Shown here: positions 7,224 through 56,800 of the stretch, one piece after another
Numbering within the stretch: the stretch's first letter is position 1
How the letters are laid out: each line of letters starts with the position of its first letter
Source: Perna viridis
Lineage: Eukaryota
Length of the DNA: 64,000 nt
Assembly: GCA_037379345.1 (NCBI GenBank)
Contig: CM074524.1
Span: 26,780,750-26,844,749 of the forward strand
Reading direction: 5' to 3'
The notes under the pieces: model-generated
What the model was told of the DNA's origin: nothing
Databases searched by the model: none
The model's input: the letters and a program-made list of their open reading frames with translations, nothing else
Program-made: the position numbers and the translations under genes

Positions 7224-7879
7224 CTTGATACGAAGAAATCTGAAAAAAAAATTTGCGACATATTTCCAATAACTTTTTCCATATGCATGGCTAAAGTAAG
7301 TCTTAAAATTGTTTTTAATGTAACTGATAGATAAAGCATGTTTACAACTAAACACGACGATACAAAATTTTAGGCGTTTTGAGATTTAACGTCATGGCGG
7401 AGTCAAATTCGAGATTTAAAATTTATAAATTTCGGAAAAACCTCAATTAACAAAAGCTGGGATTGAATTTCTCTTGAATGTATTAAATTTGTTTATCTCA
7501 ATTATACATTTCGATAAACCTTATTATCTATAAATGGTATACGTACATGTATCAATTAGCGGCAGAATCAAGTCTTACAATGTATTTATTATTTTTTTAA
7601 ATTTAATTAATGTAGACCGAAAATAAAGAAGTAAATAAAAATGAAGAATGTAAGAACGTCTGTTGACTATAATGGGTATTTTGGTACGAAAGTAAATAAA
7701 TGAAGTTCGTGTGAAAACGGAAAAGCATCAAAATGTCTATTTACTTCTCGGTAACCCCATTTTAGCATATCAAATTTGAAAAAAAAAAAACAGTTGAGTG
7801 AGACCTTATATATGTTAAGAGATATTCCTTACCGACTACGACCAATGCCAAATAGTGAAGACTATCGTAGAGTCTATCC

Positions 7880-7887
7880 TTTTTATA
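7880..7887 (-). promoter_or_regulatory. TATA box of the small secreted-protein gene
   Basis: TATAAAAA on the minus strand, about 30 nt upstream of a short putative first exon that ends in a gtaag donor at 7832. Confidence 0.6.
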
Positions 7888-9535
7888 CCCCTATCGCCGT
7901 GAGATGAAAGGAACAGATATAGACTATTTCCGTGTGTAAACTCGCTTCCGGGTGAGTTAAAATTATTCAATTACATGTATATTTTTGGGCGACATATGTA
8001 CATGCATATCACAAATTAAAAAAAAAACGATCATTTTGTTTGACCAGAAAAATTACATGTAAACTATGCGTGACTTGTTTATGTTTTAATACTACATAAA
8101 GATGTATAACAAGTCCATACAATTTATGTTCCAATATTTTTAGAACTACTTTTACAAGTAGTATAACATTTGTATTCAGTAATTAACCCGTTGGATATAT
8201 GTCTATTCAGCGCCTTATAGTACTGTATGCCTGAGCTATATGGACATTTTTACTTGTTGTACATGTGTTTTCGCTGTGATTTGTAATTTAAGTATAAAAT
8301 TTGTGCCTTTGTTTGTTTTTTTTTATTTTGTTGTTGTTTTGGTCTGTTGTTATTTTTTATTGTGTTTTGTTGCTTTGTTTGTTTGTTCTTTGTTATTTTT
8401 GTTTTTGTTATTTTTTTTGTTTGTTTGTTTTGTTTGTTTGTTTTTTGGTTCTCATGATTTTTTGGTTTTTCGGTACATATCGAGATGCAATAATAATAGC
8501 AATCAAAAAGAACAGTTCCTCTTTATACGTACATGTTATATTCCAGAATCGCAAAAATACAAGTAATGCATGTATCATATGACCAATTATATATAATGAA
8601 GAGTACCAAAAAGTCTATAGTTTTATATTTAAGTATATAATAGCACCATGCAATTTTGCATGAAAAATTCTCGTTCCGCAAAAAAACTTGAACGGCATTT
8701 ATTACTTAGTCTAGTTCAAATTGAAAATTCAATATTCAGACGTATTCGCTACCATTGTATTTTTATTCACAGTACGCATGTCCGAGATGATACTCTAGTT
8801 AGTTAAAGATGGACCCTGAAATCTGTAATTTTTTTTAGTTTATTAATTTGTTTTAAGATAAATAAATATCTGTTGACATAATTATGTGGCCATCTCTACA
8901 ATTTGCTCCAACTACCATGTACCCACGTAAGTTCTGAATTCTGCACTAGTATATTTCTGTTTTTTTTTCTAAATTGAAGGTTTTATCATCGTATTGCATT
9001 CTTTTCTTCTTAATATATACATTAAGTACCAGTCCACATAAAATTCAGAAACTGCCAATAGTAAAGTGCTTCATGATGTAGAACAATGCTTTTTCTATCT
9101 ACATACGCTATATATTAACATAACGATAGATCTGCACTTTTGACAAAATCTTACATTTATCTCCCATTAAATTCAGCCAATTTGAAATCGAACAAAATCA
9201 AGAACGATAACTCTTGCAAAATGCCAATTTCAAGTACAATCTATACAATTTTTATCTCATAAACGCAAACTTCAAATGAAAAAAAGTTAGACTGGGTATG
9301 TGATCAATAGCTGTTTCTGAACAAGGAATTAAAGTGAGTACGTCGGGTTTTTTTAAATGCAAGAATCACTTTCTCTCTGATTTTTGTAAAGAATGCTATT
9401 TAAATGTTTAGGTAACCTTACTTTTTTTAAGGTTAATGACACATGATTGTATTCAAGTGCAAATGATATAAGTTATGAGTTGTGACCAACAATCGTTGAT
9501 ACATTTGTAGCACTTGTGCAAGTGTATAAAATAGT

Positions 9536-10418: not shown

Positions 10419-13400
10419 AAATCAAAATCAGATCAAATAAGCTTTATTTAAAGTCGGCAAGTTATGTAACAAAATAACATAATCTCTTAAAGAGCTTTTA
10501 TAACCGACATAAAGTGAATAATAAAACAGTGAGTGCATGCATACATGTAAGACAATACATAAAACGAGACATAAATAAAATATGACGAAGACAAGTTAAG
10601 ACATTTACAAGCACTTATAAGGAAATTAAATGCAAAGCAAGCAATAAGCTGTTTAATAAAACTAGTAGCGTAAATTTAAGGAAGATAAGCAATCAAAACA
10701 TCAATAAACATAAACAGGACCACACAGAGAACAATAGGATTTAGGTGCGCTGCTTCAGTCATGGTAACATAAATCATGTTTTACAGGCAACACAGGAGCA
10801 GTTTTTTCCCTCCCAGCTCGAAATCATAGATTTAAATTGATTAAAATTTGAGCACTGTCTGTACTCATCAGGAAGAGAGTTCCAGAGGACTGGAGCAGCA
10901 TACCTAAATGATTGTTTCCCATACCTTGTTGTTTTTACATGAAGGATCTGTAATAAGTTACTGTATCTGAAATTATAAGTATGATTTTGTTTACAGATTA
11001 AACCGGATAATACAGGTGGTGCTTGATTATGTAAAATTTTAAAAGTTTCTAGTGCCATGGCTCTAACACGGCTTATATGTAGTGAAGGCATTTTTGCCTT
11101 TATTAAAAGATCCTCATATAGAGTTATAATCATAATACACATACCGTAATGCTCTTTCTTGTATTTTTTCTATTTTCTTTATATTGGCAATTGAACAAAA
11201 GTGCCAAGAAAGGAGACAAAAATTAAAATTTGACAATATAAATGTATGAAAAATAGTAAGTCTACTTAGTTTACAAAGATTTCTACCAACTCTTTTTTTT
11301 AAATATTCATATGTTGTACAGCTTTTGTACAAATATTTTTAATATGACTATCAAAATTTAACATAAAATCTATATCAACACCTAGGAGGTTGACTGTCTA
11401 TTCACATGTCAAATTAATATTACCAATTCTAAAAGAAGGAGACCTTTCAGCAGACTTTTTACCTACAGCAATCGCCTGAAATTTTTCAGGGTTAGCCTGT
11501 ATGCAGTTAACTTGAAACCAATCAATAAATTTTACTTTCTGTTTCTAAAACATGTACTAGATCATCATAACTAGAAGAACAGTATGACAAAGTATTGTCC
11601 TCTGCATACTTATAAAGATTTCCCTTTTCAATGAAATAAAAAATGTCATTGATAAATACATTAAATAGTAAAGGCCCCAGTATTGATCCCTGGGGTACAC
11701 CTTTTTCAATATCTGCCCATTGGCTTACAATACCACCTATCTTTATTTGTTGTTTTCTACTTGATAAATAAGATAAAAGTAGATTACAGGCTTCTTCAGA
11801 CAGGCCATAGGAAGACAGTTTACACATCAAAATATTGTGGGGAAGGCAGTCAAACGCTTTAGATAAATCCATAAGAATAGCAGGCAAAAAGTGATTTCGT
11901 TCCAAAGCAAGTTTCCAATCTTCCAAAAGTTTTAGCAGAGTTGTTTGACAGCCATGTCCTTTCCTGAATGCACACAAAAAGTTATCAAATATATTTTCGA
12001 AGAAATTTGAGAGTTGCTCTGCCTTCAATTTTTCGAATAGGGAGAATATTGACAGGTCTATAGTTGTTTTTCAGGAAAGGATCGCTCTTTTTGTAGATAG
12101 GTGTAACCTGTGCTTCCTTTAGCCTGTCTGGAAAAGAACTAGTTTCTATAGAAAAATTGATCATATCAGTAATTGGTTTTACAATTGATGAGCTGCAACA
12201 TTTTATCAATTTTACAGAAATTTTATCAACACCTGTAGCCTTTTTTGTATCAAATTTGCTTATAATTTTGGCTACTTTTTCCTCACTGGTGGGTTGAAAA
12301 GTAAAGCAATTTTCTCAAACATTTTATCTTCAATTTTCTCCAAACTAGGATGATTATCTTTGTCAAAATTGTAATCTTTTCCAATATCTTTGGCTACGCT
12401 TATAAAAAAGTATTAAAAACTTCTGCCACTTCTTCATTTTTTGAAATAACATTTTCATTTTCTTGCAGAATAATTTTTGAATCTGAACTTTTACATTTCT
12501 TTGAAAAATGAGGCTTTATAGTTTGCCAGAGATCCTTTTATTTTCATGCTCCAGTGAATCGTTCTAAAAAATACTTATTCTCTGATTTACGTTTTAGTTT
12601 GTTAACAAGATTTCGTCTAATTCTATACTGTTCCCATGTTTTAGAATTCTTATTTTTTAAATATTTGGTATAATACATTTTCTTGTCATAGATTGCCTTC
12701 CGAATTCCCTGTTCATATAAGGAACCTGATTTTGCTTCCTGTACATTGTTTTTATAGGAGTATGTTTATCAAAAATGGTTGACAGTTTATTTTCAAAACA
12801 CTCATTTATGTTGGTACTTTGGTCTTGGTAGGTTGGTTTATCGATATTTGCAATAACTTCATTTAATGCATTGATATCTAGTGTTCGGAAACTAATATAG
12901 TTTATTTTCTGTTTTTCTTGGACAGGAATAGAGTTATTGATAACTGTACAGATCATATTATGGCAGTCACTAATTCCTGTTGAAAAATTTAGTGTTCTAA
13001 TGCATTGTTTCCTGTTGTTTGTTAATATGATGTCAATCATTGAAGGTGTGCAGTTTTTCATGTTGGTTCCTTGACTAAGTTGGATAAGTCAAAAAGCTCA
13101 ACTAGATCAAAAAGTACTTTTCTTTTTTGGGACACAAAAGATCATAATTAATGTCACCAATTATCATATTATTATCATAATGCGTAATACATTTGTCGAG
13201 AGTTTTTGTAATATTCTCACGAAAGATCGTATCATTCATATTTGGTGGCCTATAGACACAGATTATACACCATTTAGTTTTATTCAGGATTACCTCATAT
13301 ATGATGTTTTCAAGGGTCTTGCACTCTAGGTCTGGTCGTCTCCCTGCAGGGATATCTGATCTGATGAACGTCGCAATACCTTTGGCTCGGGAATCTCTAT

Positions 13401-16543: not shown

Positions 16544-16550
16544 TATAAAA
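16544..16550 (+). promoter_or_regulatory. Putative TATA box of the beta-propeller gene
   Basis: TATAAAA about 107 nt upstream of ATG 16651. Confidence 0.45.
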
Positions 16551-16650
16551 GTATCCCAAGGTACGTTGAGATAAGCTGTACTTATGCATTGGTCAAATAC
16601 TTGCGCTGTAACATCCCGTTCAAACATCTGATAGTAGACTAAGGAGGATA

Positions 16651-18055
16651 ATGTTGGACCGGTTTAACTTTCTTGTTATGACCCTCTTACAATTACAGTT
16701 TCTTACTGGTAAGTTTACACGTCCTTTTGAGAACATTGTAAAGGCGACGAAAATGTATTTTCTATTATGAAAGATTAATTAAGGAAACCCAAAGTCGATT
16801 GGAAATTAAAGAATTTATTTCAAGAGTAAAGACTAGACGGGAAAAATAGACACACAAAACGTAGAAACAAAAGAAAGTGAGCAACCCGGACTCTACTTAA
16901 AACTTGAATCATGAAAAATGAACCGGGATCGAGCTTCATTGTTGAACTTATTTTTCTATAGTCAAAATTTGGAACAGCTAGAAAAATGGAAAATCCAAAA
17001 CTCCAGACTCCAAAACTTTAAATCTTTAGAACTTGGACAGTTATAGTGTATGCACCGTCCCACTGTCAATGAAATTCGAAACAATATTTGCTACATGTAA
17101 CTACGTGTAAACACCAAGAATTCTATAAATAGAAATAGCATGGAAACGTATCGCGCAGAATCGTACAAATAAACACGATAGATAAATAACTCAAATGAGG
17201 ACAGGGACACACTGCCAGGTATGCAGATTCTTTGGTTGAATTTGAAAAAAATAGGATTACTAATTTGTTTATCAATGACACTTAATATCGTTAATGTTTA
17301 CGGTAAATTAGTTTAATCTTTTTGAAAATCGCATTGACGTACAAACTTATTTTAAAATCTACAAGGAAACGATTGGTGTGGTCTTAAAAATAAACTTAAA
17401 AAAGCATGATGGAAAGATAACGACTAGACAAGACACAAACAATAAATAATTTAAAATAAAAAAAAATAATACGTACAAAGAAACAAATGTAAATGAGCAT
17501 CCCGAAGTTGCTCATATGATGTCACATCTGGGGTAGATCAAACAGTGTAGGAAACGATGCACACATCAGTTGGATACTCCGTTCATGATGGCAACCACAC
17601 AATTCTGTAGTGATGTCTTTGAACTTGAAGCAACATAACACTGTTCCAGAAGCTTAATTGTGAGAATTCTTGCTCGGTTCAAAAAGTCCGTCTAGTTTTC
17701 GTAACATATGGCATAATGTATGAGGTGTGAAATAAAAATTCCGTACGTAGGTGCTAAAGGGATGTAGAGTTCTCCTTTTTACCCTATCAATAGATCAAAT
17801 TTAGTTGAAACACTGCAGTAAAGTGGCGTTTAAATTTCTCGGACATTTCCCTATATAAGCAGTCAAAAACAATCTATGCCACGGATGCTTCAAGCATTTT
17901 AAAAATAAAAAATAACTTTCCGGCTGTATTTTCGATGTATTGAATTTATTTGAGACAAAAAAAAAATTGAGAAAGTAATGTGTCATCCAATGCCTGATTT
18001 TGACAAAAAAGGTACTTGATATGTTAGATCTTAGTCAGTAACATTCTATACGTTA

Positions 18056-18091
<36 letters not shown>

Positions 18092-21000
18092 TCTTTTATT
18101 CACATTTCAGATAACCGCGATCATTATCTTTCATTGAAACATTTCAGTTAAATTACTATTTAAGTACCAGTCCGTATAAAATGCAGATACTTTCCATACT
18201 AATGTGTTTCATGGTGAAGAAAAATCCGCCGTACAAACGAAGATTTTTCAGTTTACATAATTATGCTGTACTTTCATATAATGATAGTCCTTCCTGACAT
18301 CGTTTGTCCCTATCGAGACCTTTTAGTTTTAAAGCAAACCAAAATATTTCATATTATATTGCTCTTTTTAAATTGTTATATTATATGGCTTAATGATATT
18401 TTAAGTGTCTCATAGGTCTATAGTGGCCGGGCAACAGATTATTTCATAAATGTTTATCTTGTATTGTGTTATTTATGTATATCTGATGTGTGACACTCAA
18501 ATAAATATTTTATTATTTTTAATCATTTATTTAAATCTGTGTAATGGATAAAACCTTGTATTCATCTCCCACTAAAATCAATGAAATTAAGACGAATCAC
18601 GAACATTAACTTTTGCAATTTTTTTGCCAATTTCATACACATTTTTAAAATTTCTTAAAAAAATCACTTTGTAAAGACTGCTACTAAATAGACATACATG
18701 TACACTTGTACATGTAGACTAGTACTTACCACGGTCAGCTGTGGTTTGTGTAAACAGACCTGTCAATGTGAAAACTTTTTCTCGGTTTCTAAATTTTCGT
18801 TTTCTGACCAGGTAGTGCTTATTTAATCAACATCAATTATAACTAGTCTGTATGTTTAAAAAAATAAACGAATGATTTCAAGTTGGTCTGGTATTTGTAA
18901 ACAATTCCTGTTTCTTTACATAAGGTTATTATTTTTCGATGTTATTGTATATGACACTAGCACTGAAACTTACGTCAAAACTGATAATGATATAATTCGT
19001 TATGGAAAGGCCGGATCAAGATTCACGATTAAAAAAGTACGAGTTAACTAAAGCATTTTGGGGTTTTACAAAATCTTAATGTGACAGAAATTACAATACG
19101 TGATTTCCAAGTGGTGACAAGTACATCTACATGTATGACTTTCAACCATAAATTCATAAAAAATAAATATAAACGATATTCTTGTTTGTGTTGTGAAGAT
19201 ATGTTTTTCATATTTTTTCAATTTGATTTTTTCAAGCTGTTCCGAATTTTGATCATGGAACAAAACTTTCAACAGTGACATCAGGGCGTATTGATGAAGC
19301 TTCCGGTCTAGCTGCAAGCCGAACGCATTCCGGGGTACTGTACACCATAAATGATCATGGCGACGGACCACATATTTATGTGTTGGATAGTGCAACAGGC
19401 CACAGGATTTCTACGATCACTTTAAACAATGCTCAAAATGGCGACTGGGAGGATATAGCCTATGGTCCCTGCCCAGGAGGATCATACTGCATTTACGTTG
19501 GTAAGCCTCTAGAACAACGGGCATGTAAACTGGGATTTTATACATATATTTACAGTTACCAGTATAAAGGTACATTTTGTATATCCTGTCTTGGAACCCT
19601 CTCCATTTTTGGAAAATTTTGTTAAATTCGTGCTAAAATTATGGGCACAAATGATAAAATAATACCCGGAAACCCTCTTTTTGCAGTCGCTGGATCCACC
19701 CCAAAAATATGTTGTGTAGCTCACTTGTCTTCTATCGAATAGAAGTTAACATCCTTATACGACTGCAAAGAAATTGCGGTCGAATTATTGTTTGTTGCTG
19801 TCGTCTGTGTCGTCGTCAGTGATTTTCGGTACCATTTTTAACATTTTTGGTAACATTTTATAAAGATCGAAAGTCTTGTATTCAAGTTATAGCACGATTT
19901 ACTTGGTATCGTGCTACAACTTGAATACAAGACATTCGATCTTTATAAAATGTTACCAAAAAGTTCCACAAAAAAATAAGAAGTTTGCTAATACAATATT
20001 ATTGTTGGGTTTATAGTCCCGACAGTTTCAAGAATTAATTTTCATAGAACTTCGAACTACATTTAAAAAAACCCATTTTACTATGACTTTGGTCAAGGCA
20101 GAGGGATGTTTATGATATTGTATTGGCAATATTCCACAATGTACATCATAAAGATAAGACTTTAGTTGATCTTTGGGGTTAAACTTGAAAAATTAAGGAA
20201 TAATGAACAAAAATGGGTCAGCAACCAGCATTTTTGTGAGTCTGAATGATTACTGGAGATAAATTGTGCCACATGGTACCTTCCCAAAGGAAGGTCGGGG
20301 TTAATTTTGGAGATTGTGACTTGAAACGTTTCGAGGCCTCAAACAAACATTTTCTTGATGTTCGGACAAAACGTGAATTGATCATTTTAACAATCGTTCA
20401 ATATTCCTCAATGTGCCATTCCAAAATAGAAATGAAGTTTGGTTTTTGAGATTGTGGCTTGAACCTTTTCGGTATAAGGGTACATAAATGGGCAACTTTG
20501 ATTCTGTTTTAATTCATGTTTTGTGTCAAATATTTAATTGCCGTCAAAATTCATCTAGCTTTATAAAGTTTGGATGGTGTGTCCATACATGCCCTAACGG
20601 TTCGGGGTTCGGCCTCTACAGCAGTATCCAGCTGCATCCTGGGAAGTATTTTATTACTTTCCAAAGAACCATGAATGCTGGATCACACACATTTGGTCAC
20701 ATGATACGATATTTTTTTCAGGGGACACCGGCGATGCTACTTCTAGGAACACTTTGTACATGATCAGAGAACCAGCCGATGTACACACTGATCAGCATAT
20801 TGATGTATTTAAAACGCTGAGATATTCGTAAGTTTTGGGCCATAGAGGTTTGATCCCAACTAGTATATACATGTATAAGCAGGGTGTACAATTGATAGTG
20901 TGAGCAAGTAAGCCCCTGTGGTTGAGCCAACCGCATGTCTTGAAATGATGTGTTGAAAATCACATAGTTACATGTACATGTACTGTAATTATGACACTTA

Positions 21001-21878
21001 ATTACGGCTAGTATTTTAAATAATGTTTTGTGCCTTGTTAAGAAATACGTGTCGATGCGTCTGTCTACACATGCGAAATGATAGTATTTGGTAGAAATCA
21101 ACAAAAGATAAATGTAGAATCTACACTTTTGCTACATCACAAGCGGAAGTAATATTAGTGTCGATTCATTATCTATTGTTATTCCGGAAAAAAAGTATTG
21201 AGTTGTTCATACATATAATGCACCTGTATAATAAGCAGGGGCGGTTCCCGGATTTCGTGTTTGGGGAGATACATAAAATAAAAGGTCGAGCGATGCGAGG
21301 CACGAATATATTTGGGGTACGATTAGTGAACAATCAAAATTTTGTGCCTTAAAAAATATTCCAAAGTTTTATGAGACATTCACAAGGTCCACCACCAATG
21401 ATCTGCGCTTGGTATTATGTTCAAAATTGTACAGTATTGGTTCTTTGAAACTTACAGATGGTCAGAAGGAGATTGTGAGACGTTATTGGTTGATCCTCAG
21501 GGAGAAGTCTACCTAGTAACAAAAATTAAGGGACAAGCCGCCAAAGCTGCGCATGTTCCATCTAGCGGATGGAACAGTGGGACAACTGTTGCCCTGAACA
21601 ATCTGGTAACCCTGGCATTTCACACAGCAAACAACGACCCGACAGGAGGTGACATTTCTCCAGATGGCCGCGAAATCCTTCTTGTATCTCATCATAAAAT
21701 GTTTTGGTTCAACGTAACGAATGGTGACGTCCTTGCCGCGCTTCAAACTAGTCCTGTCGAAGTTCCTTATATAGACGAACCCCAAGGAGAGTCTGTTACT
21801 TGGGATCCTAAAGGTCAAGGTTATTACACACTGAGTGAAGGTCATTATCAACCTATATACTACTACACGCGTCAATGA
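16651..21878 (+). CDS. Secreted beta-propeller protein of a bacterial-type uncharacterised family (282 aa); exons 16651-16708, 19237-19500, 20722-20827, 21458-21878
   Basis: All junctions are GT-AG with matching phases (1,1,2), total 849 nt. Hydrophobic leader MLDRFNFLVMTLLQLQFLTA. Blade-like motifs EASGLAASR..LYTINDHG, DWEDIAYGP..IYVGDTGD, DCETLLVDP..VYLVTK, TGGDISPDG, EPQGESVTWDPKG..YYTLSEG. AATAAA at 21901-21906. The exon 1 link is the least certain part. Confidence 0.88.
17490..17733 (-). mobile_element. Diverged Penelope-like 3' fragment (intronic)
   Basis: Homologous to 44780-45045 (gttcatgatg, ttctgtagtgat, caacataac, ctgttccagaagc). Confidence 0.6.
18056..18090. repeat. (GT)n microsatellite
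   Basis: Direct inspection. Confidence 0.95.
18161..18728. mobile_element. MITE-like copy of the 4.4/9/25-kb repeat family with short terminal inverted repeats
   Basis: TAAGTACCAGTC at the left end and GACTAGTACTTA at the right end (11/12 complementary); internal homology to 9022-9420. Confidence 0.5.
19844..19962. repeat. Long near-perfect inverted repeat (55-bp arms, 9-nt loop)
   Basis: Arm 19844-19898 is complementary to 19908-19962 with 2 mismatches; loop ttacttggt. Confidence 0.95.
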
Positions 21879-23004
21879 TGGAATGAGGAGTGCCTTTGTC
21901 AATAAATGAGGTGGAAACTTTCACGTGTATAGTCATACACGGAGGACATGTCATTCATAGGTATCTTTGACAAACCCAAATTGAATGACAAACTTAAGTA
22001 CAATATACATTGTATCTCTCGGGTAATAATTTTAAGTACATTAAATATATATAATTATCTTTTACATCCTTCATGTACAAGAAAAATCAGGATTGCCTTT
22101 ATTGTAGATTCCAAAGAGACGGAAATGCTTCAGATCAAACTAAGTTGCCGCCTGTACAGTTATACATGTAACGGTATCTGACCGTCCGTCCAACCATCCC
22201 CACCTTTTTGACATATTTTGTAATATTAGTTTTGACCAAATGGTTTCCAGGAAGAAGAGCGGGTGTATCCTCTAGTGAGCTTGTCTGGAAACTTTTTTTT
22301 CTAGTTTAAGTAGAAATAGGCGTAGTTTTTATTTGAGTTCACTTAAATGTATACATGTATATTTGATGTTACTGACGCATCGTACCTTTATTTCAAATGA
22401 ACGATATAACTCCTTGTTTCTTCATCTAGTAAAGTAGCTAGACTTTTTGGGGTCCAACATTGTAACTAATAAATCTGAAGTCACACCCTTCCCTGGTTAC
22501 TACCCAGTTTCATGGGTAATTCGCCGCAGCATAAAATATATGCTCATATCATGACCGCCTACGTCAGAATCTAAATTGGAATGTGAACGAAATTACACAT
22601 TTTTTAATAGTTTTTAGTATTTTGTATTTAGATGCGTTACGTCTAATCAAAATTTGACACTTTACGTGTTTAAATTCTAATTAATAAAAAATAACACTTA
22701 GCGTACACATCTTACAGTCAACGTTTACAAAAGGTTATCATAGCTAATTAAAACTCTGAAAACATCGTAATTTTCTTACTCTTTTATTTGATATAAAAAT
22801 ATAAGTTACACAAATATTGTGTATATAAGATATTAAACTGCACATCGTTCCCATTGTTCTTCAGCTTGTATATTTTTTTTAATTTGTCACGTTTGTAAGT
22901 TTTCTGTTTAGTGTGAATATTTCTTGGTTTTTATGTACATGCATTGTTTCGTTTAATTTTGTTTTTGTTTTTTCTCCCTTCCCACTTCTTGTAATCTGAT
23001 GATT

Positions 23005-33000: not shown

Positions 33001-36000
33001 CGGATCAATCTCATAATTGCCTTTCATTATTTTTTCAAGTAGTTGTTTTTACCAAACCTTATGCAAAAAAAAATACCCATACATTAACACAGTGGCAAAC
33101 AGTTACGGTTTTTAATTTTACGATTTAGTAGACAACTACTTGTTTTACTTTTATTTCATATGGCTTATACTCTTTGAAAATTAAAAGCCTTTTAGTTTGT
33201 TTGCCAATAAACCTAAAAAATTATGTTCAATATTTTTATCTTGATATTTTGTGCTGTAATCCCAGACAAGACAGATCATTGTTTATGACAGTCCATCATT
33301 ATTTCTATTTATCATCATTTTTGAGACAAACCAAATTCCCCCATCCGCCTCCAACCTATGTAGGACAACGCCAGACGTCATCATCATTTACAAATAATAG
33401 TGGACGGGGGGGGGGGGGGAGGGGGGTAAAGGAAGTAATCCTCCATTGAATCCTTGCTCATTTTCTTATTTTAGAAAAAAATTCATGGCACCTATACAAA
33501 TGTGCATAACGTGATAAATAACGTGATGGATTTTTCCATTGAAAAATAATGTTAATAATAATCCTCTGCAGAATATCAAGAATTATAGTTGAAGACCACT
33601 TTCAATAGTAAAGATATACATTGAATTTTTTTTTACATTTTCAGAGTCGGAAGCACGAAAATTTAGACAAAGGTAAGCATATGTAACTATTTTTTAATCA
33701 ATGGAACAGAAACTATGGTTCTTCTTTTCTTGACTAAAATTAATCTCTCTGTAGCAATCTGCATCGACGAAGATCATCCAGCCAATCCCTGGCTATACAT
33801 ATCGATACGGAATTTTTTGTGTCCCTCCCACAAGGAATGATAGTAACTTCGCAACTTTGCTCATTATGTTCTTGGTACATTCTGGTGAAATACACCTTTT
33901 AAGTAAAACTGTTTTTATTCAAGTGACCATCTATAGCAACTCAAACTAGAATTGATTTCCATGTTTAATCTCGTTGAAAGCTACGCTGCACATGTATGTA
34001 AATGTTATCGGGTTTTCCATTTTTTAGAATTTTAATATTCAAATTGTTTTAGGAAATTGCGCCAGATAATGGTGAAAGTTTTATGCCCTCTTATACATGT
34101 ATATATGTACATATAATACAAATCTTCGTCTGTACAAACGAGTTTGTACTTGTACAGTAACAATAGTTCTTCTGTAACTACGTAACTTTAATTTATTCTA
34201 CATATTGAGGCAGAAGTTTGGAGTATTCATCTATATCAATGTGAATTAAATGTTTTTCCGTTTGTATTACACAAATAAAAGACTGCGGTTTTATGATTGA
34301 TATCTACATGTAAAATAGTTTTTCTTTTTTTTTCAGAAATTGACGAATTGTTCAAAGTCTTCGACAAAAACAATGATAACTCTATAACGACTTCAGAGCT
34401 AGGATCAGCCATGAGATTCCTAGGTTTACGTCCGACAAATAAGGAAATTAAAGAGACAATGAAACTGTTAGATAAAAATGGCAATGGACGAGTAGACAAG
34501 AGGGAATTTAAGGTATTTCTGAAAAACTACATTAAAGAAAACCCAGAAGCAATGAGTCAAGAGGAAGCGATCCGTGCTGCGTTTAAAGTGTTCGACAAAG
34601 ACGGCAACGGTTCTATAGGTAAGAATGGGTTAATGGACACCAATTTTACTCATAATATCCTTACCCTTCCAGAGAACCTTATATCACTTCCGTTTTTTTG
34701 TGGGAGTTCAAATTACTTTTATTTAAATACGTGTGTGTGTGTATGTGTGTGCTTTTCGTCATCTTCAGTTTTTCAAAGTAATTTAAAGTGATTGTATAAC
34801 TACAAAAATGTACATTGTGTGCAGAGTCAGTCTACATCATTAGATTCGGAGTTCTCTAGATTGTCCTATTATTCCGATACTTCGGTGATCCTATTTTTGT
34901 GATATTTACGTTAACAGGTAACAACTATTAGGACTACAAAGTTGTAAGTACAAATCTGTGTCAGATTCGTGCAAAATGTGAAATCAGATACACATATCGG
35001 TGTCAAAAACTTATCGGTCTGGCAATAGATATCGTTACTCGTTTTATCCAAATGTTGAAAAATGAGGTTTTGACAATGGTACATGTATCTACCCCTGAAA
35101 TGTGCATTTGTAGTGCATTTAGATGAAATTATAAATCATTTTACGAAATGATATAGAAAAGTTTCTCTTTGATCCTTTATACTTTATATATTAATGAATC
35201 AAATTGTAAAAAATATACTTTAAAAGCGGTATATTATTACTCGCTTTGTGTCAGCTACTGTGTTTGAATTTTACTTATAGACAATGCTTTAAATAAAACA
35301 AACATAAAACAATGGAACTAAATAAAATAAAACATGACAAAATTGGAAGACAGTAGGAAAGAAATTAAGGATACACGCACAAATATACATATGTACACCA
35401 GCTTACATCATCAAAAACATGTTACTACTAGGGCATATGGAGAAAAACCTAAATGGAACTCTTTGTCCGGCATACACTCTATATGCATGACTTATTTATT
35501 TTATACACTTCGCAACTGTTTTACAGACGCGAAGGAATTGAAAATAGCAATGACAAAGCTTGGTGAAGCCTTAACCGACAAGGAGTTAGCAGAAATGATG
35601 AGGGATGCTGATATCAATAAAGATGGAAAAATAGACTATGATGGTAAAATTCTTTTTACAAGTGCTTTAATGATTTAATCGCTTTTATATTTCTGCATTG
35701 CTAAAGATACTTAATACATTTGTTTCAAGGGACAGATATAATATCATACGCAAAGTAAAGATTTGTGCTGACTATTTTGGTCTTTAATTACTAATAATAT
35801 AAGTGAGGATTGCATGCGATACTAAGTGTCGTCAGCTGTGGGCTAGACCATGTCAGAAACAGCTTTATAAATGGTCTAAATGTATACACATGTTCAAAGA
35901 AAATATGAAAATAAACCATACGTACTAGTATAATTTTATATCATCTACGTTCGTTTTTTTTTTCAGAATTTGTGAAAATTTGGACTGAGACAGAGAATGC

Positions 36001-37211: not shown

Positions 37212-40200
37212 CTAGCCAATTGCAGCACTTATTATTGGGAATTGGAGAAAAGTACTTCCTGTTTGTTTATGAGCCACATGTAAGGTCTTTATAAATTTTG
37301 GAATAAATTCTGTCCACAAAGCAGTTCTCATTGGGAGCATGCGAGACGTTGCTTCTATTTTCTGACCAACACGGAGATATCGCTGATGTTCTACGTCATA
37401 AGGTTGCCAATGTTCTTCTAATGGATTTGGTTGGTTCGGATTTCTGAAAAGTAAATTCCAATAATTTGACTGAGAACATACTTTGAGACTGTATATGTAC
37501 ATGCACCTTTTTATACTTATTCTAGCCTTGCGAAATAAAAATAATGTTATAATTCTCTTATGTTGGAAGGGGAAATAGAGGGAACCGAGCTTCGAATGGT
37601 AATAAAAAAGAATATAATCGAAGGATAACAATATGACAAAGATAATACAAGTCTTGTACAATAAACACACTCCTTAAAACTTTCACGGTTCCCACTTTAG
37701 CATTCATGCATCGTTTATCGTGTGTTTACACATGGTTTTGTGTTCGTTCAAACGCACCATAAACGTACGATAGAAGGGTTCGTGTAAACGCACGCTAGGT
37801 GGTCTCAGTATTGCATTAATATTACCACAGACTTCTATAGTGAAGTGCATATTTGTACGGTTTTTAAAAAAAATCTGTAAATTGATTCAATAAAATTTTC
37901 ACTTAGGTAGCATTACTGAAGACATGGGAAAAATAATTTCCCGCAAAAAAAGTCGGGTGAGTCCACGAAGATTAGTCTTTAACTATATATAGCTATATTC
38001 TCTACTTTCACTTTCGATAAAACTTTCACTTAGGTAGCATTACTGAAGACATGGGAAAATAATTTTCCGCAAAAAAAGTAGGGTGAGTCCACGAAGATCG
38101 GACAAAAAAGTAGTCTTTGAACTATTAAATAGCCATTTTCTCTCGTTTTGCACTCGCCAAACCAACCTTTTCAGGCGAACATTTTTATGTTAAAATGTTA
38201 ATTTTTCTTAATCAAAAGTTTGGCATCTTATAGTGTGATGTTTGCCCATTATTCATATATTTTAACAAAACATTAGTTCCTAGAAAGGCGAATAGAAATC
38301 ACACTATTTCTTTTAAATATGCCCCGTGTTTTGACGTACACCTGCTCAGGAATACGCAATGCAATACTGGTACCAGGTATCGTGCGTGCGAGAAACCTAA
38401 ACTTCTCAGGGAGAGTAGCACGTGCAAAGAAAGCAACCCGGACTCCACTAACAATTGGGCATTGACCAGGTAAGCAGCCCCGGTCACCTTATATTGAAAA
38501 ATTGTCGGCCAGGGTATAATGTATCCACAACCTGTCAATAAACCTAAAAACTAGTTCAAATCTGTTGATTTTAACCTTTTTAAAGTGTGGGGGTGGGGCT
38601 TGGAAAATTTTGAAATAAAAAAAAATAACTCGGACCTTTTTTTTTTATTAAAAAAATAGATAGATACATCAAATATTCAAACTTTTGAGAAAAACAGAGA
38701 ATTTTCAAATCAGTCATTGCAGTGTAAAAACAAAACACAAATTTCTTACCCTGTCTTTGCAAAATTTGCAATGTATGACATCAGTCTTTTTGACATCTCA
38801 TTTTCTTCCGCAGGAATCTTAGACCTTGACATTGCAAAAGGTCCCAATACACTGTTCGGAAATCCAAAGAAGTAAGGTATTTCGTCAGCATGTAGGTTGG
38901 GTGGTTGGTAATCTAGTGGTTGGGTGAAGGATGAATGCCTTGCAAATCCCATTAAGTAAGTTTTCTTCCCTTTCTCGCGTTTGGCATGAGCAATGGCAGT
39001 AAAAATTGACGGAATAAAGAAACTAAAGTCCGTATCTAAATTTAAAAGTTCCGTTTTATAGGTTTTGTTACCCAGTGTTTTGTTCCAGTCCGTATACACA
39101 AAAGCTAACATGTTTGCTAGTTCCGGTGACGTAATATTGTACCTATCCAATAGCATTTTCGGTATAACATCTTTCTCAATAACCGTGTCCGGAGAAATTG
39201 TTCCGTTTGTGAATTTTTGTACGTATGGCAGCATAGTTGCACCCGTAACGACCGTTCCATCGCCGGTCAGTGCAACTATTGTTATATCGATGTTGTCAAA
39301 CACAATTCCGGTTTGATCACTCATCAAGGAATAATTCTGAAAAATATCTGGAGCATACTGAAGAACAAAGTCTCCATCTGGAGCAGGAACGAATTCAGGG
39401 CGAAAAAGATTTTCAGATTCCTTTCCGACACGTGATTTTGCAATAATATCGTTTGCAGGTATTCTGCGCATACATTCTAACATTTTTGAATCATTGTTTA
39501 CTGGACAATTCAAATTAAATGCCATGCGTTTTGTAAAATCTAGCATTTTGGCTCGTGTATTGTAACCCCAAGCAGACATGGCGACACCACTCTCGGCTAT
39601 TACACGTGTCACAAGGCCTTTATTCCCAGGATACATTGTTTGGTAGATTGTACTTCCGCCTCCGGCTGATTCACCAAATATCGTTATTTTGTTCGGATCA
39701 CCACCGAAATATATAATGTTATCGTGAACCCACTTAATGGCAAGGTGCTGGTCCCACAGACCTAAATTACCCAATGCGTCTGGGTCGTTTGATGCCATAA
39801 ATCCAAAAGGTCCAAGCCGGTAGTTTATTGTGACCTATGTATACGACAAAATACGATAAATCTCGGTACATTGTAGGTATAGGGGTTAAATGAATAATCG
39901 TACATGTACATGTACAATGCATACTGTTTGTACAGTTCTTATCAATTATTGGTGTTAATACATGTAATAAGTTTAAGCATAGGCAAATTATGAACAATCG
40001 TTTTTTTTTTCACCAGCACACGTAGAAAAATTTAAACTACAGAGTGGAGAAAACTTTTAATATGACTGTATGTATTTTTATTATACATGTAAGAAATGTG
40101 TAATTTAAAATATTGTGCATTTGTGAGTTTTGCTCGTATTAGAAATTAAATCAATTTTCTCTGAAATGACAAAACAAAACAACAAAATATATCCATTGTA

Positions 40201-53887: not shown

Positions 53888-56800
53888 TTATCGGAATATT
53901 TTCTTTATTTGAACAATAAGTTCAGGTTTGCTGTTTTCTGATCTGTATAATTTTGTTCTCTGAACGAACAGAACAGGAGATTTTGTTGGGTATATAACAT
54001 TAGTCCGTATTTTTGTGTCACCATACTGTCGGTTAGGTCGTATAGTCTTAATATAACCATTTAACTGGGGTTGATATTGTATCACTGAAGAACCTGGAAG
54101 TTGATTATGAAATGCTCGATTAACGGTGTTTGATATCGTTCTACCACTTTGACGTTTCATCATATAGTTTAGTAAATGCCTCAATACTTGGTCTATTCTT
54201 TGTAACTTAGAAATAACCTTCTGTCTCTTTTGAAAGCTTGACACAGGTGCTCTTCTCTTTGGGGACCGATCCATAACTTTGAAGAAATCATATTCAGTTT
54301 CCTTTTTATGAATTTTATCTGTGTTCCCTTGCACTATTCTATTACCTTGTAAAATGTTGTTAGTGGTTGTTTTCTGAGAGTGTTTAGGTTTAATATCATG
54401 CTGGAAACTTTGTCGCAAATTAGTCGGCTGTATCATATTTGTCTGCAAATTTTCTTTTCGAAAATGGTTATAACCCTTATTAAACATCGGACTTTGCATA
54501 ACAGCATTCCTAGATTCATTTTGTAATTCGTTTAACGAGACACGACTTGGCCAATTATTTGAATTTCGGTTAAGATATTGTACATTGCTTGATCCAAATA
54601 CGCTGGTATTCCATTCAGGGTTGTGCGTATTTGTTGTATCTTCACGACGGTTTTGGTCAGAAGATTTTTCAGTTGAATTCCTGTTAAACTGTGTGTAGCG
54701 GCCGTTTTGCACATAAATGATACCTTTGTTCGCTTCTGTAGCATCATTGGTAATTCTTTTAGAATGTAATATGTCTACATGATTTGTCATATTGTCAACA
54801 CTACTAAAAACATCTATGTCAGACTTTTTAAAATCCATCGAGGAATTTTCTATATTTGTTTTATCTAATGGTAAACCATTGTCAGCATTCAATTTATTTC
54901 TTGTTATCTTTGTCTTTTTGTTTTGTCGTTGTACAAATGAACCCCGCGACAAGAAACCGACAAGTCCTCCTTTGGTAGAGTTAGGGAAACGATGAATAAT
55001 TTTCTTCGGATTATACTGAGTTGTCGACATGAATATTTTCTTTGGAATTGATGATGCCAGGTCAAAGAAGTAAACTTCTGCATCCTCAATTGGTACTTCT
55101 GTACTTTTAAGATCCTTTGGAAGGGCACTTCCTTTGGTTTCCCTTGGCGATGTCGTTATGATCTCCGATTGTATACTCTTTGGTGTAGGAGCAAGCTGGT
55201 TAACAGTTCCTTCGACAATTCTATCTGGTTTCTCTGACCCATCAAACTGATATTTTGGCAAATAATCATTCGATCCTGAATTACGTTTCATCATGATTTC
55301 GGAATTATTTTCGTATATACGTTCAAATATAATTGGGTTATATAAACTTCTGGTCAGTTCCACATTGACCGGCGTAATGTTAAGTGGCAATACGTCAGTA
55401 TGTTTCTCGATACTTGGAAAAGATGAATTCTGACCAACTTCATCTCGGTTACCTCTAATTGAAGTATATGTTTTCAATTTTTGTTCATTAGAAGCAATAT
55501 TACTTTCTGCTTTTGGCCTTCGAATTTTTCTAGATAGGAAACTAGACAAGGATGCAACATTTGTTTTGTTCTTTGTTTCAGCAATTCTAGATTTGTCATG
55601 GGCTTCGTGACTTGCGAGGTTCCAGCTTTTTAGACCATGCATTCCATATTGCTTTTGTGCATTGTGATAAGAAAAAGGTCGAATAAAATTAGTCTTAGTA
55701 ATACTATTTGTGTGATGAGTGTGATGATTTAATTGTCTCGACATCTGATTTGAGAGGGGTTTCGGTCCAATAAAACTCGTTGTGGTTGATTCACCTGTTT
55801 TGACGTCTTTAAGTTGCTGGTACGAATGAGGGAATTTAGGTTGAATTGAACCCTTGACTTGCGAGTTGTGTCGAACGTTTTGATAAGAAAATGGATCGTT
55901 GTCAAGAAAACGTTTCCTTGTAATTGATTTCTGAAGAGGTTTTTCTAAATACGAGAACGTCCCTGAGTGAGCTTTATCACTTGAACCTTGAACTGATTTT
56001 TTGTATCGTTTTTGCCACTCGGAGTAATTTCTATCATATTTTGGCATTGCCAAACTATTACTCACAATGTTTTTGTCCAGTCTTTTTTCTTCTTGTTTGT
56101 TGTTTTCCTGTTTGTATATTTTTTTAATCTTCAAGTTGTAGTTGGCAGCACGGTTTTCACGTATTATGTGTTTTGATGTCTGAATATTGTCATCACTTTT
56201 GGGAGCTTTGCGGAAATAATTATGTTGAGGTCCGCTTGAGTATGATGATTTATACTGAAGTAAAAATCATAAAATCATAGATACTTAGTTCAGTTTACTT
56301 TTATCCTCAATGGGATATATACATTGTAAAAAAGTTCTATTACACTTCAACAATTATATTGAACATTTGCTTTTTTCATCTTAAGTCGATATTTCATTCG
56401 CACATTTACAAAAATAATTACAGTGTTATCGTTTCTATTAAAATTTTTTATATTAATGTTGAATTACTGTTTAAAATTGTAACATTACTTCTAAATTTGA
56501 TGGGCCAGGATGAGTAGGTGAACTGTTCAATGATGATATTGGAAAGGTTTTGAAACTTGTTGATTTAAAAGGATGAAACTATTAAACAGTCCATGTAAAT
56601 AACACGAGTATTTTAGGGAATACATTTTAGGCACGGAAGTCTCTATATAGTTGCATAAAAAACATTTTTGTATACAGTTTCTTTTACGTGTAAATAAAAA
56701 GAGCAAAAAATAAGAAAGAAATTGGAAAAACAAGTGTCCAATATTGCTTATTTTTGCTGTATGAAGTCATCCTGGCATGTAAACAGGGAAAACAATAACA

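What the first reader, a model, noticed from the sequence alone, without database searches (positions are those of the whole stretch)
16651..21878. Intron-containing secreted beta-propeller gene of a bacterial-type family: candidate domesticated horizontal transfer
Seen: four exons splice in frame to a 282-aa protein with a leader peptide, an upstream TATA and AATAAA, so this is an integrated nuclear gene and not contamination. Recalled family knowledge: the motif series EASGLAAS-R / ND(H/S)G / DWEDIA-GP / YVGD(T/I)GD / D(C/A)E-LLVDP / VTK / TG(G/A)DISPDG / PQGE / SEG matches an uncharacterised secreted propeller family common in Bacteroidetes and Actinobacteria; I do not recognise it from model animals. 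Inference: about five blades each begin with an acidic residue, suggesting a central Ca2+/metal or catalytic site, i.e. an unknown extracellular enzyme acquired from bacteria that later gained introns.
Basis: partly seen in the sequence, partly recalled or inferred. Interest (0 to 1): 0.8.

Follow-up and report, generated by a model that had tools for sequence, protein, structure and literature searches.

The report
Bacterial-type propeller gene domesticated in shellfish
This is a real, spliced and expressed animal gene for a secreted five-bladed propeller protein whose family is otherwise bacterial; molluscs and a brachiopod seem to have inherited it from one very old gene transfer, and what it does is still unknown.

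Summary
Four exons (16651-16708, 19237-19500, 20722-20827, 21458-21878) join in frame to 282 aa. A 1050-nt RNA contig with no mismatches crosses all three GT..AG junctions.

No Pfam or NCBIfam model covers the protein. A profile search found 6724 clusters of relatives. They are overwhelmingly bacterial, from at least 15 phyla, and often carry secretion tails.

Every named eukaryotic member is a bivalve or gastropod, except one from the brachiopod Lingula. The eukaryotic sequences form one clade (100/100), with Lingula outside the molluscs. They share a phase-2 intron at the same codon and a cysteine pair that bacteria lack.

This fits one bacterium-to-animal transfer before the mollusc-brachiopod split, followed by intron gain and duplication. 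This genome has three copies.

Two limits apply. The tree cannot be rooted, so the direction of transfer rests on distribution. Absence from other animals is not proven, because hit lists were truncated.

A homologue folds with high confidence (pLDDT 93.5) as a five-bladed propeller. It is closest to E. coli YjiK (Z 22) and to bacterial glutaminyl cyclases (Z 20-21). The window protein keeps all 21 family-wide conserved residues. A calcium- or metal-dependent extracellular role is inferred, not shown.

The parts
16544..16551 (+). TATAAAAG, a TATA-like box
   Evidence: Read. It lies 25-32 nt upstream of the first base covered by the spliced RNA contig (16576). A contig cannot fix the transcription start.
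16576..16650 (+). 5' UTR (minimum extent), containing a 15-codon upstream ORF at 16584-16631
   Evidence: Record 1 of X1 starts at 16576. The upstream ORF was read and is out of frame with the main ATG.
16651..16708 (+). Coding exon 1: start codon and leader peptide (19 codons plus 1 nt; the following intron is phase 1)
   Evidence: The joint 16707/16708 to 19236/19237 is GT..AG in the X1 contig.
16709..19236 (+). Intron 1 (2528 nt), with a (GT)n microsatellite near 18060-18090
   Evidence: Skipped in the RNA contig; sequence.
19237..19500 (+). Coding exon 2: blades 1-2, with EASGLAAS, NDHG, DWEDIA and the eukaryote-only pair Cys98/Cys104
19501..20721 (+). Intron 2 (1221 nt, phase 1), containing a roughly 110-nt inverted repeat near 19850-19960
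   Evidence: Skipped in the X1 and X2 contigs. Mirror-image ORFs show the inverted repeat.
20722..20827 (+). Coding exon 3: GDTGD and the invariant Glu124-Pro125
20828..21457 (+). Intron 3 (630 nt, phase 2, splitting the Ser143 codon as TC|A just before the conserved Trp). The same position and phase occur in Haliotis and Lingula.
   Evidence: for the joint; for the shared position.
21458..21878 (+). Coding exon 4: blades 3-5, with DCETLLVDP, GGDISPDG, EPQGE and SEG; stop codon TGA at 21876-21878
21879..22100 (+). 3' UTR (minimum extent). AATAAA at 21901-21906 is read through.
   Evidence: The X1 contig ends at 22004. The X2 contig continues beyond 22100 by about 490 nt.

Best explanation
The locus is a functional nuclear gene for a secreted, acidic protein of about 260 aa once the leader is removed. 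The protein is a five-bladed beta-propeller of a large family that no curated model covers. That family is a remote relative of the YjiK/CarP ('SdiA-regulated') propellers and has the same fold as the bacterial/plant-type glutaminyl cyclases.

The family is widespread in bacteria as a secreted or surface protein. An ancestor of molluscs and brachiopods most likely acquired one copy from a bacterium. The gene then gained a eukaryotic leader, a disulfide-type cysteine pair and spliceosomal introns. At least one of those introns arose before the two phyla split. It then duplicated repeatedly, leaving three loci in this genome.

How it works is inferred. Conserved carboxylates (Glu, Asp) sit at the start of the second DSSP-listed strand of every blade. 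I take these to be the inner strands, so the carboxylates would ring one mouth of the central channel. There they would bind Ca2+ or another metal and a small ligand or substrate outside the cell.

Shown here: the gene model, its expression, the fold, the family's size, the single eukaryotic clade, the shared intron and the cysteine pair. Inferred: the direction and date of transfer, secretion, metal binding and any catalysis.
For: Splicing and expression. Host context, a carboxylesterase exon and an EF-hand gene nearby.

Family size and bacterial breadth: 6724 clusters at E<=1e-3 and 593 confirmed stretches in species-representative bacterial genomes from many phyla. Bacterial members carry T9SS tails, a lipoprotein signal, dockerin, PKD and lectin fusions.

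Named eukaryotic members are only bivalves, gastropods and Lingula. The Atlas shows a single eukaryotic cluster, mostly Mollusca.

Trees: the eukaryote/bacteria split has 99 in FastTree (446 rows), SH-aLRT 100 in IQ-TREE C20 quick and 100/100 in IQ-TREE LG+F+G4. Molluscs are one clade at 96.6/98, with Lingula outside.

The phase-2 intron sits at the same codon in the window gene, Haliotis and Lingula. tblastn exon boundaries in the C6 and C15 paralogues and in Potamilus agree approximately.

Cys98 and Cys104 occur in 94-95% of eukaryotic rows and in no bacterial row. All 21 family-wide conserved residues are kept in the window protein.

Fold: pLDDT 93.5 and pTM 0.91. YjiK Z 22.2 and glutaminyl cyclases Z 20-20.8, well above the next match at 15.9. 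hhalign against YjiK gives E 6.6e-5 over 230 columns. CarP of that family affects Ca2+ homeostasis (PMC10574481).
Against: The root of the tree is unknown. The midpoint root falls in the eukaryotic stem region, splitting off the 80 mollusc rows, so nesting inside bacteria is not shown.

Hit lists were capped at 120-150 rows, and only about a quarter of proteins carry names. Other animal phyla may therefore hold the family unseen. Two transcript-like sequences that branch with Lingula (P0033, P0308) have no known organism.

No conserved bacterial gene neighbourhood points to a function. No experimental function exists for YjiK, the closest structure. The window protein's leader is less hydrophobic than its orthologues'. 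Two RNA runs of the same species show no reads on the exons, so expression is restricted.
Confidence: 0.7

Rival explanations
1. The family is ancient in eukaryotes or animals and was inherited vertically. It was then lost in almost every lineage except lophotrochozoans. No transfer took place.
For: Eukaryotes and bacteria are reciprocally separated by one long branch, and the midpoint root falls in that region of the tree. The gene tree inside the eukaryotes follows the species tree.
Against: No named eukaryote outside Mollusca and Brachiopoda appears among the best 150 or 120 rows of three searches made with eukaryote-derived queries. Eukaryotic and bacterial proteins still share 33-47% identity over their full length. 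This reading needs very many independent losses.
Confidence: 0.12
2. Molluscs and brachiopods, or several mollusc lineages, acquired the gene from bacteria in separate transfers.
For: Marine filter feeders are constantly exposed to Bacteroidota and Planctomycetota, which carry the family.
Against: All eukaryotic rows form a single clade at 100/100. They share a phase-2 intron at the same codon. They share a cysteine pair and other eukaryote-only residues that are absent from the 363 bacterial rows.
Confidence: 0.04
3. The transfer went the other way, from an animal to bacteria.
For: The tree is unrooted.
Against: Thousands of bacterial clusters in at least 15 phyla, free-living soil and freshwater taxa among them, stand against two animal phyla. 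Bacterial members have typical bacterial secretion modules. The bacterial branches are deep and diverse.
Confidence: 0.03
4. The gene is bacterial contamination or an assembly artefact and is not an animal gene.
For: The nearest non-animal relatives are bacterial.
Against: There are three spliceosomal introns, and spliced RNA contigs match exactly. The locus lies in a chromosome-scale contig with animal genes and retroelements around it. Paralogues with introns lie on two other chromosomes. Intron-bearing orthologues occur in many independent mollusc assemblies.
Confidence: 0.01

Closest known systems
YjiK / CarP family (Pfam PF06977 'SdiA-regulated'); structure 3QQZ of E. coli CFT073 YjiK; P. 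aeruginosa CarP (PA0327)
   Same: It has the same five-bladed propeller fold and is the best structural match: Z 22.2, rmsd 3.0 A, 225 of 243 residues. A profile-to-sequence alignment covers the whole domain in register (hhalign E 6.6e-5, probability 64%). Blade-start motifs partly correspond (S-x-L, D-x-E-x-I, GDN, E-G, SE). Both are exported bacterial proteins. CarP is Ca2+-regulated and affects Ca2+ homeostasis (PMC10574481).
   Different: The PF06977 model does not detect the window gene, its exons or its full-length homologues. Identity in the structural alignment is 13%. The DWEDIA, GGDISPDG and EPQGE signatures are specific to this family. No biochemical activity is known for YjiK or CarP, so the comparison transfers little function.
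Bacterial/plant-type glutaminyl cyclases (Pfam PF05096; structures 3MBR Xanthomonas, 3NOK Myxococcus)
   Same: They are five-bladed propellers of the same size: Z 20.8 and 20.0, with 212-215 residues aligned. From my own knowledge, they are secreted or periplasmic proteins with a metal ion on the propeller axis.
   Different: PF05096 finds nothing in this genome. Identity is 9-12%. The cyclase catalytic residues could not be compared here.
Phytase-like / esterase-like propeller repeats (Pfam PF13449)
   Same: Two relatives give sub-threshold hits: P0011 at 22.4 bits and P0067 at 23.2 bits, against a cut-off of 27.6. Atlas neighbours carry PF13449, NHL and PF06977 together. Blade starts are rich in Glu and Asp.
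   Different: Nothing is above the cut-off and there is no hit on the window exons. PF13449 proteins are usually larger.
Other bacterial genes domesticated in animals (for example the 28 putative bacterial genes reported in the clam Archivesica marissinica)
   Same: A gene of bacterial type is integrated in a mollusc chromosome and expressed.
   Different: Most of those clam genes carry integrase or gag domains, and the paper reads two-thirds of them as acquired after two vesicomyid genera split about 14.5 Ma (PMC7826175). This gene is shared by bivalves, gastropods and a brachiopod, has conserved introns, and belongs to a family without any annotation.

Membership tests
Pfam PF06977 SdiA-regulated (YjiK/CarP) | Match to the family HMM above the gathering score (21 bits) | tested here: not met
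   There was no hit on the three exon translations or on 14 full-length homologues. The own-genome scan finds only an unrelated 18.6-bit match on contig C2.
Pfam PF06977 SdiA-regulated (YjiK/CarP) | Five-bladed propeller fold superposable on YjiK (3QQZ) | tested here: met
   Model of the Haliotis homologue P0020 (pLDDT 93.5) against 3qqz_A: Z 22.2, rmsd 3.0, 225 of 243 residues, top of 48161 chains.
Pfam PF06977 SdiA-regulated (YjiK/CarP) | Detectable sequence homology at profile level | tested here: inconclusive
   hhalign of family alignment A2 against the single E. coli YjiK sequence gives probability 63.9% and E 6.6e-5 over 230 aligned columns. No YjiK family profile was available.
Pfam PF05096 glutaminyl cyclase (bacterial/plant type) | Match to the family HMM above the gathering score (22.3 bits) | tested here: not met
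   No match in the own genome at E<=1, while 4 of 14 control genomes match. No Pfam hit on homologues.
Pfam PF05096 glutaminyl cyclase (bacterial/plant type) | Conserved catalytic residues of the cyclase active site | not tested
Pfam PF13449 Phytase-like | Match above the gathering score (27.6 bits) | tested here: not met
   The best scores are 22.4 and 23.2 bits on two relatives. There is nothing on the window exons.
Domesticated bacterium-to-animal transferred gene | Integrated in a host chromosome, with spliceosomal introns and a spliced transcript | tested here: met
   contig C14 of a 723-Mb assembly; three GT..AG joints in RNA contigs; host genes nearby.
Domesticated bacterium-to-animal transferred gene | Eukaryotic members form one narrow clade while prokaryotic members are many and diverse | tested here: met
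   The eukaryote/bacteria split is supported at 100/100.
Domesticated bacterium-to-animal transferred gene | Eukaryotic clade nested inside donor diversity on a rooted tree | tested here: inconclusive
   No usable outgroup was available. The midpoint root falls in the eukaryotic stem region.
Domesticated bacterium-to-animal transferred gene | Absence from other animals and from unicellular relatives | tested here: inconclusive
   Only molluscs and Lingula are named among the best rows. The lists are capped, most proteins are unnamed, and P0033 and P0308 are unidentified.

The most novel reading that the evidence does not exclude
A bacterial secreted Ca2+-handling propeller was captured by the last common ancestor of molluscs and brachiopods and co-opted into extracellular calcium handling, that is shell or biomineral formation. 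On this reading a horizontal transfer contributed to the Cambrian origin of lophotrochozoan shells. The only support is circumstantial. The known carriers are two shell-forming phyla. The protein is secreted and acidic (31 Asp+Glu against 15 Lys+Arg). Its nearest characterised relative, CarP, affects Ca2+ homeostasis. Nothing here shows mantle expression or presence in shell proteomes.
Probability: 0.06. Interest if true: 0.9.

Novelty: new member of a known kind. Interest (0 to 1): 0.6.

Why it matters
Well-supported bacterial genes that animals have kept for hundreds of millions of years are few. For molluscs, a 2020 genome paper still stated that no such event had been reported in the phylum (PMC7826175).

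This case is clean. It has a spliced transcript, a shared intron and a eukaryote-only cysteine pair. It forms one clade across two phyla and has multiple retained copies, which implies a lasting selected function.

It also draws attention to a very large bacterial family of secreted propellers that has no Pfam or NCBIfam model and no known activity. Working out the function in either a bacterium or an oyster would annotate thousands of proteins.

Tried and rejected
**Searches that gave nothing useful**
- Pfam and NCBIfam on exons and on full-length homologues: nothing on the propeller domain.
- PDB by sequence: only blade-level similarity to WD40-type designed propellers.
- Foldseek against PDB: generic seven-bladed WD40 hits at TM below 0.52, so uninformative. 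The VIA wide search was needed instead.
- Bacterial gene neighbourhoods in 80 loci: no conserved partner. The best was a TonB-dependent receptor in 7 of 80, and the rest were housekeeping genes.
- Literature look-ups by protein or LOC identifiers and by SRA run numbers: no paper. General searches for transferred genes in molluscs found no report of this family. The shell-proteome paper PMC13425148 does not mention propellers, and no supplement is held for it.

**Tree work that did not finish or did not settle the question**
- The 'careful' mixture-model trees did not finish in the time allowed. I report the quick C20 trees and a completed LG+F+G4 run with bootstraps instead.
- Midpoint rooting did not settle the direction of transfer.

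- The joined 282-aa protein was never handed to a search or fold tool. Database searches used exon references, and the structure is that of the Haliotis homologue. The joined protein was assembled only inside local scripts from window.fa, for local BLAST, alignment and trees (onward).
Full report
**Gene model**

The sequence at 16651-21878 contains four coding pieces: 16651-16708, 19237-19500, 20722-20827 and 21458-21878. They are bounded by GT..AG and have intron phases 1, 1 and 2. Joined inside a local script, they give 849 nt, which is 282 codons plus TGA with no internal stop.

One 1050-nt contig of X1 covers 16576-16707, 19236-19499, 20721-20827 and 21458-22004 with no mismatch. A 1442-nt contig of X2 covers the last three exons and runs past 22100.

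Seventeen RNA-type runs from five studies hold 0.10-0.22 of the sampled words, which is roughly the share the exons and UTRs make of the stretch. Two raw RNA-seq runs (X21, X22) have zero depth on the exons, so expression is restricted by tissue or stage.

TATAAAAG at 16544-16551 sits 25-32 nt upstream of the contig's first base. The AATAAA at 21901-21906 is read through.

**Host context**

The window is G000:C14:26780750-26844749 of a 723-Mb, 46-contig assembly. Nearby are a carboxylesterase exon (38746-39798, minus strand), an intronless EF-hand ORF (34297-34791) and reverse-transcriptase fragments. Contamination is excluded.

**The family**

No Pfam or NCBIfam model hits the exon translations.

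The word search with exon 4 found only exon-sized fragments and one unionid mussel protein. A profile of these (A1) against 1.84 billion cluster representatives gave 6724 proteins at E<=1e-3 and 2438 at 1e-10. Most are 280-320 aa and match end to end.

In local BLAST the joined protein aligns over its full length with:
- Haliotis, at 45% identity;
- Sinanodonta, at 43%;
- bacterial proteins of about 300 aa, at 33-39%.

Its closest named relative is a Mytilus trossulus protein at 70% identity.

Bacterial members come from KSB1, Latescibacterota, Armatimonadota, Ignavibacteriota, Bacteroidota, Calditrichota, Planctomycetota, Verrucomicrobiota, Cloacimonadota, Chloroflexota, Myxococcota, Hydrogenedentota, Fidelibacterota, Rhodothermota, Pseudomonadota, Krumholzibacteriota and, rarely, Actinomycetota.

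Many bacterial members carry a T9SS sorting tail. Others carry a lipoprotein signal, dockerin, PKD, lectin, metallophosphoesterase or CarboxypepD_reg modules. These are exported proteins. The propeller domain itself has no Pfam or NCBIfam model in any member tested.

**Eukaryotic range**

Every named eukaryotic hit is one of the following:
- a bivalve: Mytilus, Magallana, Crassostrea, Saccostrea, Pinctada, Argopecten, Pecten, Ylistrum, Tegillarca, Mercenaria, Mactra, Mya, Dreissena, Sinanodonta, Potamilus;
- a gastropod: Haliotis, Lottia, Patella, Biomphalaria;
- or a single exception.

The exception came from searching with P0033, an unidentified transcript-like sequence that branches beside the molluscs. 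It returned LOC106178750 of the brachiopod Lingula anatina at 48% identity.

The ESM Atlas shows one large eukaryotic cluster (92 members, mostly Mollusca) and otherwise bacterial clusters. No cephalopod, annelid or non-lophotrochozoan name appeared. The lists are capped at 120-150 rows and most proteins are unnamed, so absence elsewhere is not established.

**Phylogeny**

| Tree | Rows | Result |
|---|---|---|
| FastTree | 446 domain rows | All eukaryotic rows form one clade (support 99). The 80 mollusc rows are one clade (95). Lingula, P0033 and P0308 lie outside. |
| IQ-TREE LG+C20+F+G4, quick | 115 | SH-aLRT 100 for the eukaryote/bacteria branch, length 0.84. |
| IQ-TREE LG+F+G4, complete | 64 rows, about 303 columns | 100/100 for that branch; 96.6/98 for molluscs; 89.4/98 for molluscs plus Lingula; 88/99 for P0033 plus P0308. 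|

The gene tree inside the eukaryotes therefore follows the species tree. Inside the molluscs there are several old paralogue groups. The mixture-model 'careful' runs did not finish.

The tree has no reliable root. The midpoint falls in the eukaryotic stem region because mollusc branches are long. 'Nested within bacteria' is therefore not demonstrated, and the direction of transfer rests on distribution.

**Shared derived characters**

- Intron 3 of the window gene splits the codon before a conserved Trp as TC|A. In Lingula the split is TC|A at the aligned codon, and in Haliotis rubra it is AG|A at the aligned codon. All three are phase 2.
- tblastn exon boundaries put an intron at the same place in the C6 and C15 paralogues of this genome and in Potamilus.
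- The phase-1 intron at the end of the leader is at the identical codon in the window gene and Haliotis. In Lingula it is phase 1 but offset by three residues.
- Other introns are specific to a lineage or paralogue. The C6 copy has only the shared one. The C15 copy has extra ones near residues 67 and 215.
- Across 83 eukaryotic and 363 bacterial rows, Cys98 and Cys104 occur in 94-95% of eukaryotes and in no bacterium. Tyr55, Trp144 and Pro204 are also specific to eukaryotes.

Together these argue for one acquisition before the mollusc-brachiopod split. From established palaeontology, that split is Cambrian or older.

**Structure and function**

With alignment A2, AlphaFold2 models the Haliotis homologue P0020 at pLDDT 93.5 and pTM 0.91 as five four-stranded blades. 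Foldseek returned only generic WD40 hits.

The full VIA search ranks the matches as follows:

| PDB chain | Protein | Z |
|---|---|---|
| 3qqz_A | E. coli YjiK (rmsd 3.0, 225 of 243 residues aligned) | 22.2 |
| 3mbr_X | Xanthomonas glutaminyl cyclase | 20.8 |
| 3nok_B | Myxococcus glutaminyl cyclase | 20.0 |
| 5efv_A | next best match, phage host-recognition device (a clear drop) | 15.9 |

hhalign of A2 against E. coli YjiK aligns 230 columns in register (E 6.6e-5, probability 64%). PF06977 and PF05096 do not detect the gene. The family is therefore a separate, unmodelled branch of the same fold group.

In window numbering, the family-wide near-invariant residues are S42, G43, S47, N58, D59, D89, W90, E91, D92, A94, G96, Y106, G111, E124, P125, D208, S210, G213, E254, T267 and E270. 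The window protein keeps all of them.

The acidic residues fall at the start of the second DSSP-listed strand of each blade in the model, which I take to be the inner strand. This fits a ring of carboxylates at one mouth of the channel. CarP of the YjiK family is Ca2+-regulated and affects Ca2+ homeostasis (PMC10574481).

Bacterial gene neighbourhoods gave no functional clue. A Ca2+- or metal-dependent extracellular binding or hydrolytic role is thus my best guess, at perhaps 30-40%. It is not shown.

**Verdict**

Four corrections apply:
- The family is older and wider than 'molluscs only'.
- Nesting in bacteria is unproven.
- The AATAAA is not the main poly(A) signal.
- The enzyme idea is untested.

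I found no report of this family or transfer in the held literature.

Noticed in passing
window 16584-16631: A 15-codon upstream ORF (ATG...TGA) lies inside the 5' UTR covered by the RNA contig. It is out of frame with the main start at 16651.
   Followed up: no
window 19850-19960 (intron 2): A near-perfect inverted repeat of about 110 nt gives mirror-image ORFs on both strands. It looks like a small hairpin or MITE-type element.
   Followed up: no
window 18059-18090 (intron 1): A (GT)n microsatellite. Reads appear cut there in read laying.
   Followed up: no
window 34297-34791 (+) and 38746-39798 (-): An intronless 164-aa EF-hand (calmodulin-like) ORF, and a 350-aa exon of a carboxylesterase (PF00135, E 2.8e-58). 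Both are ordinary animal genes next to the finding.
   Followed up: partly
window 11522-12028 (-) and 53888-56134 (-): A reverse-transcriptase fragment (PF00078), and a 748-aa ORF with no Pfam hit. The latter lies near the place where another reader noted a Penelope 3' UTR.
   Followed up: partly
G000:C6:14682777-14683934 (-) and G000:C15:24118347-24124461 (+): Two paralogues of the gene lie on other chromosomes, at 40-50% identity. Their intron sets differ: the C6 copy has only the shared intron, and the C15 copy has extra introns near residues 67 and 215.
   Followed up: partly
L093 (Haliotis rubra QXJH01000324.1) 7724-7939 and 22482-22697: The exon for residues 71-142 of P0020 occurs twice at 100% identity, 14.8 kb apart. 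This is either a tandem gene duplication or a duplicated assembly stretch. Haliotis also has two-domain fusions of the propeller (P0011 598 aa, P0012 661 aa, P0086 612 aa).
   Followed up: no
Saccostrea cucullata proteins P0029, P0094, P0325, P0327, P0343, P0391: At least six family members (LOC134257345 to LOC134257355) sit on one 129,669-bp contig. This is a tandem array.
   Followed up: no
Atlas structure search with P0309: Actinomycetota PE/PGRS proteins of about 571 aa contain a domain that superposes on the Lingula model (TM 0.85 by query over 273 residues). This probably explains the automatic name 'PE-PGRS family protein' given to a Biomphalaria member.
   Followed up: no
L090 (SRR14325533 contig) and L091 (SRR27896765 contig): Transcript-sized contigs of about 1 kb encode uninterrupted members of the eukaryotic clade (P0033, P0054) from organisms I could not name. 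P0033 with P0308 branches outside molluscs plus Lingula.
   Followed up: partly
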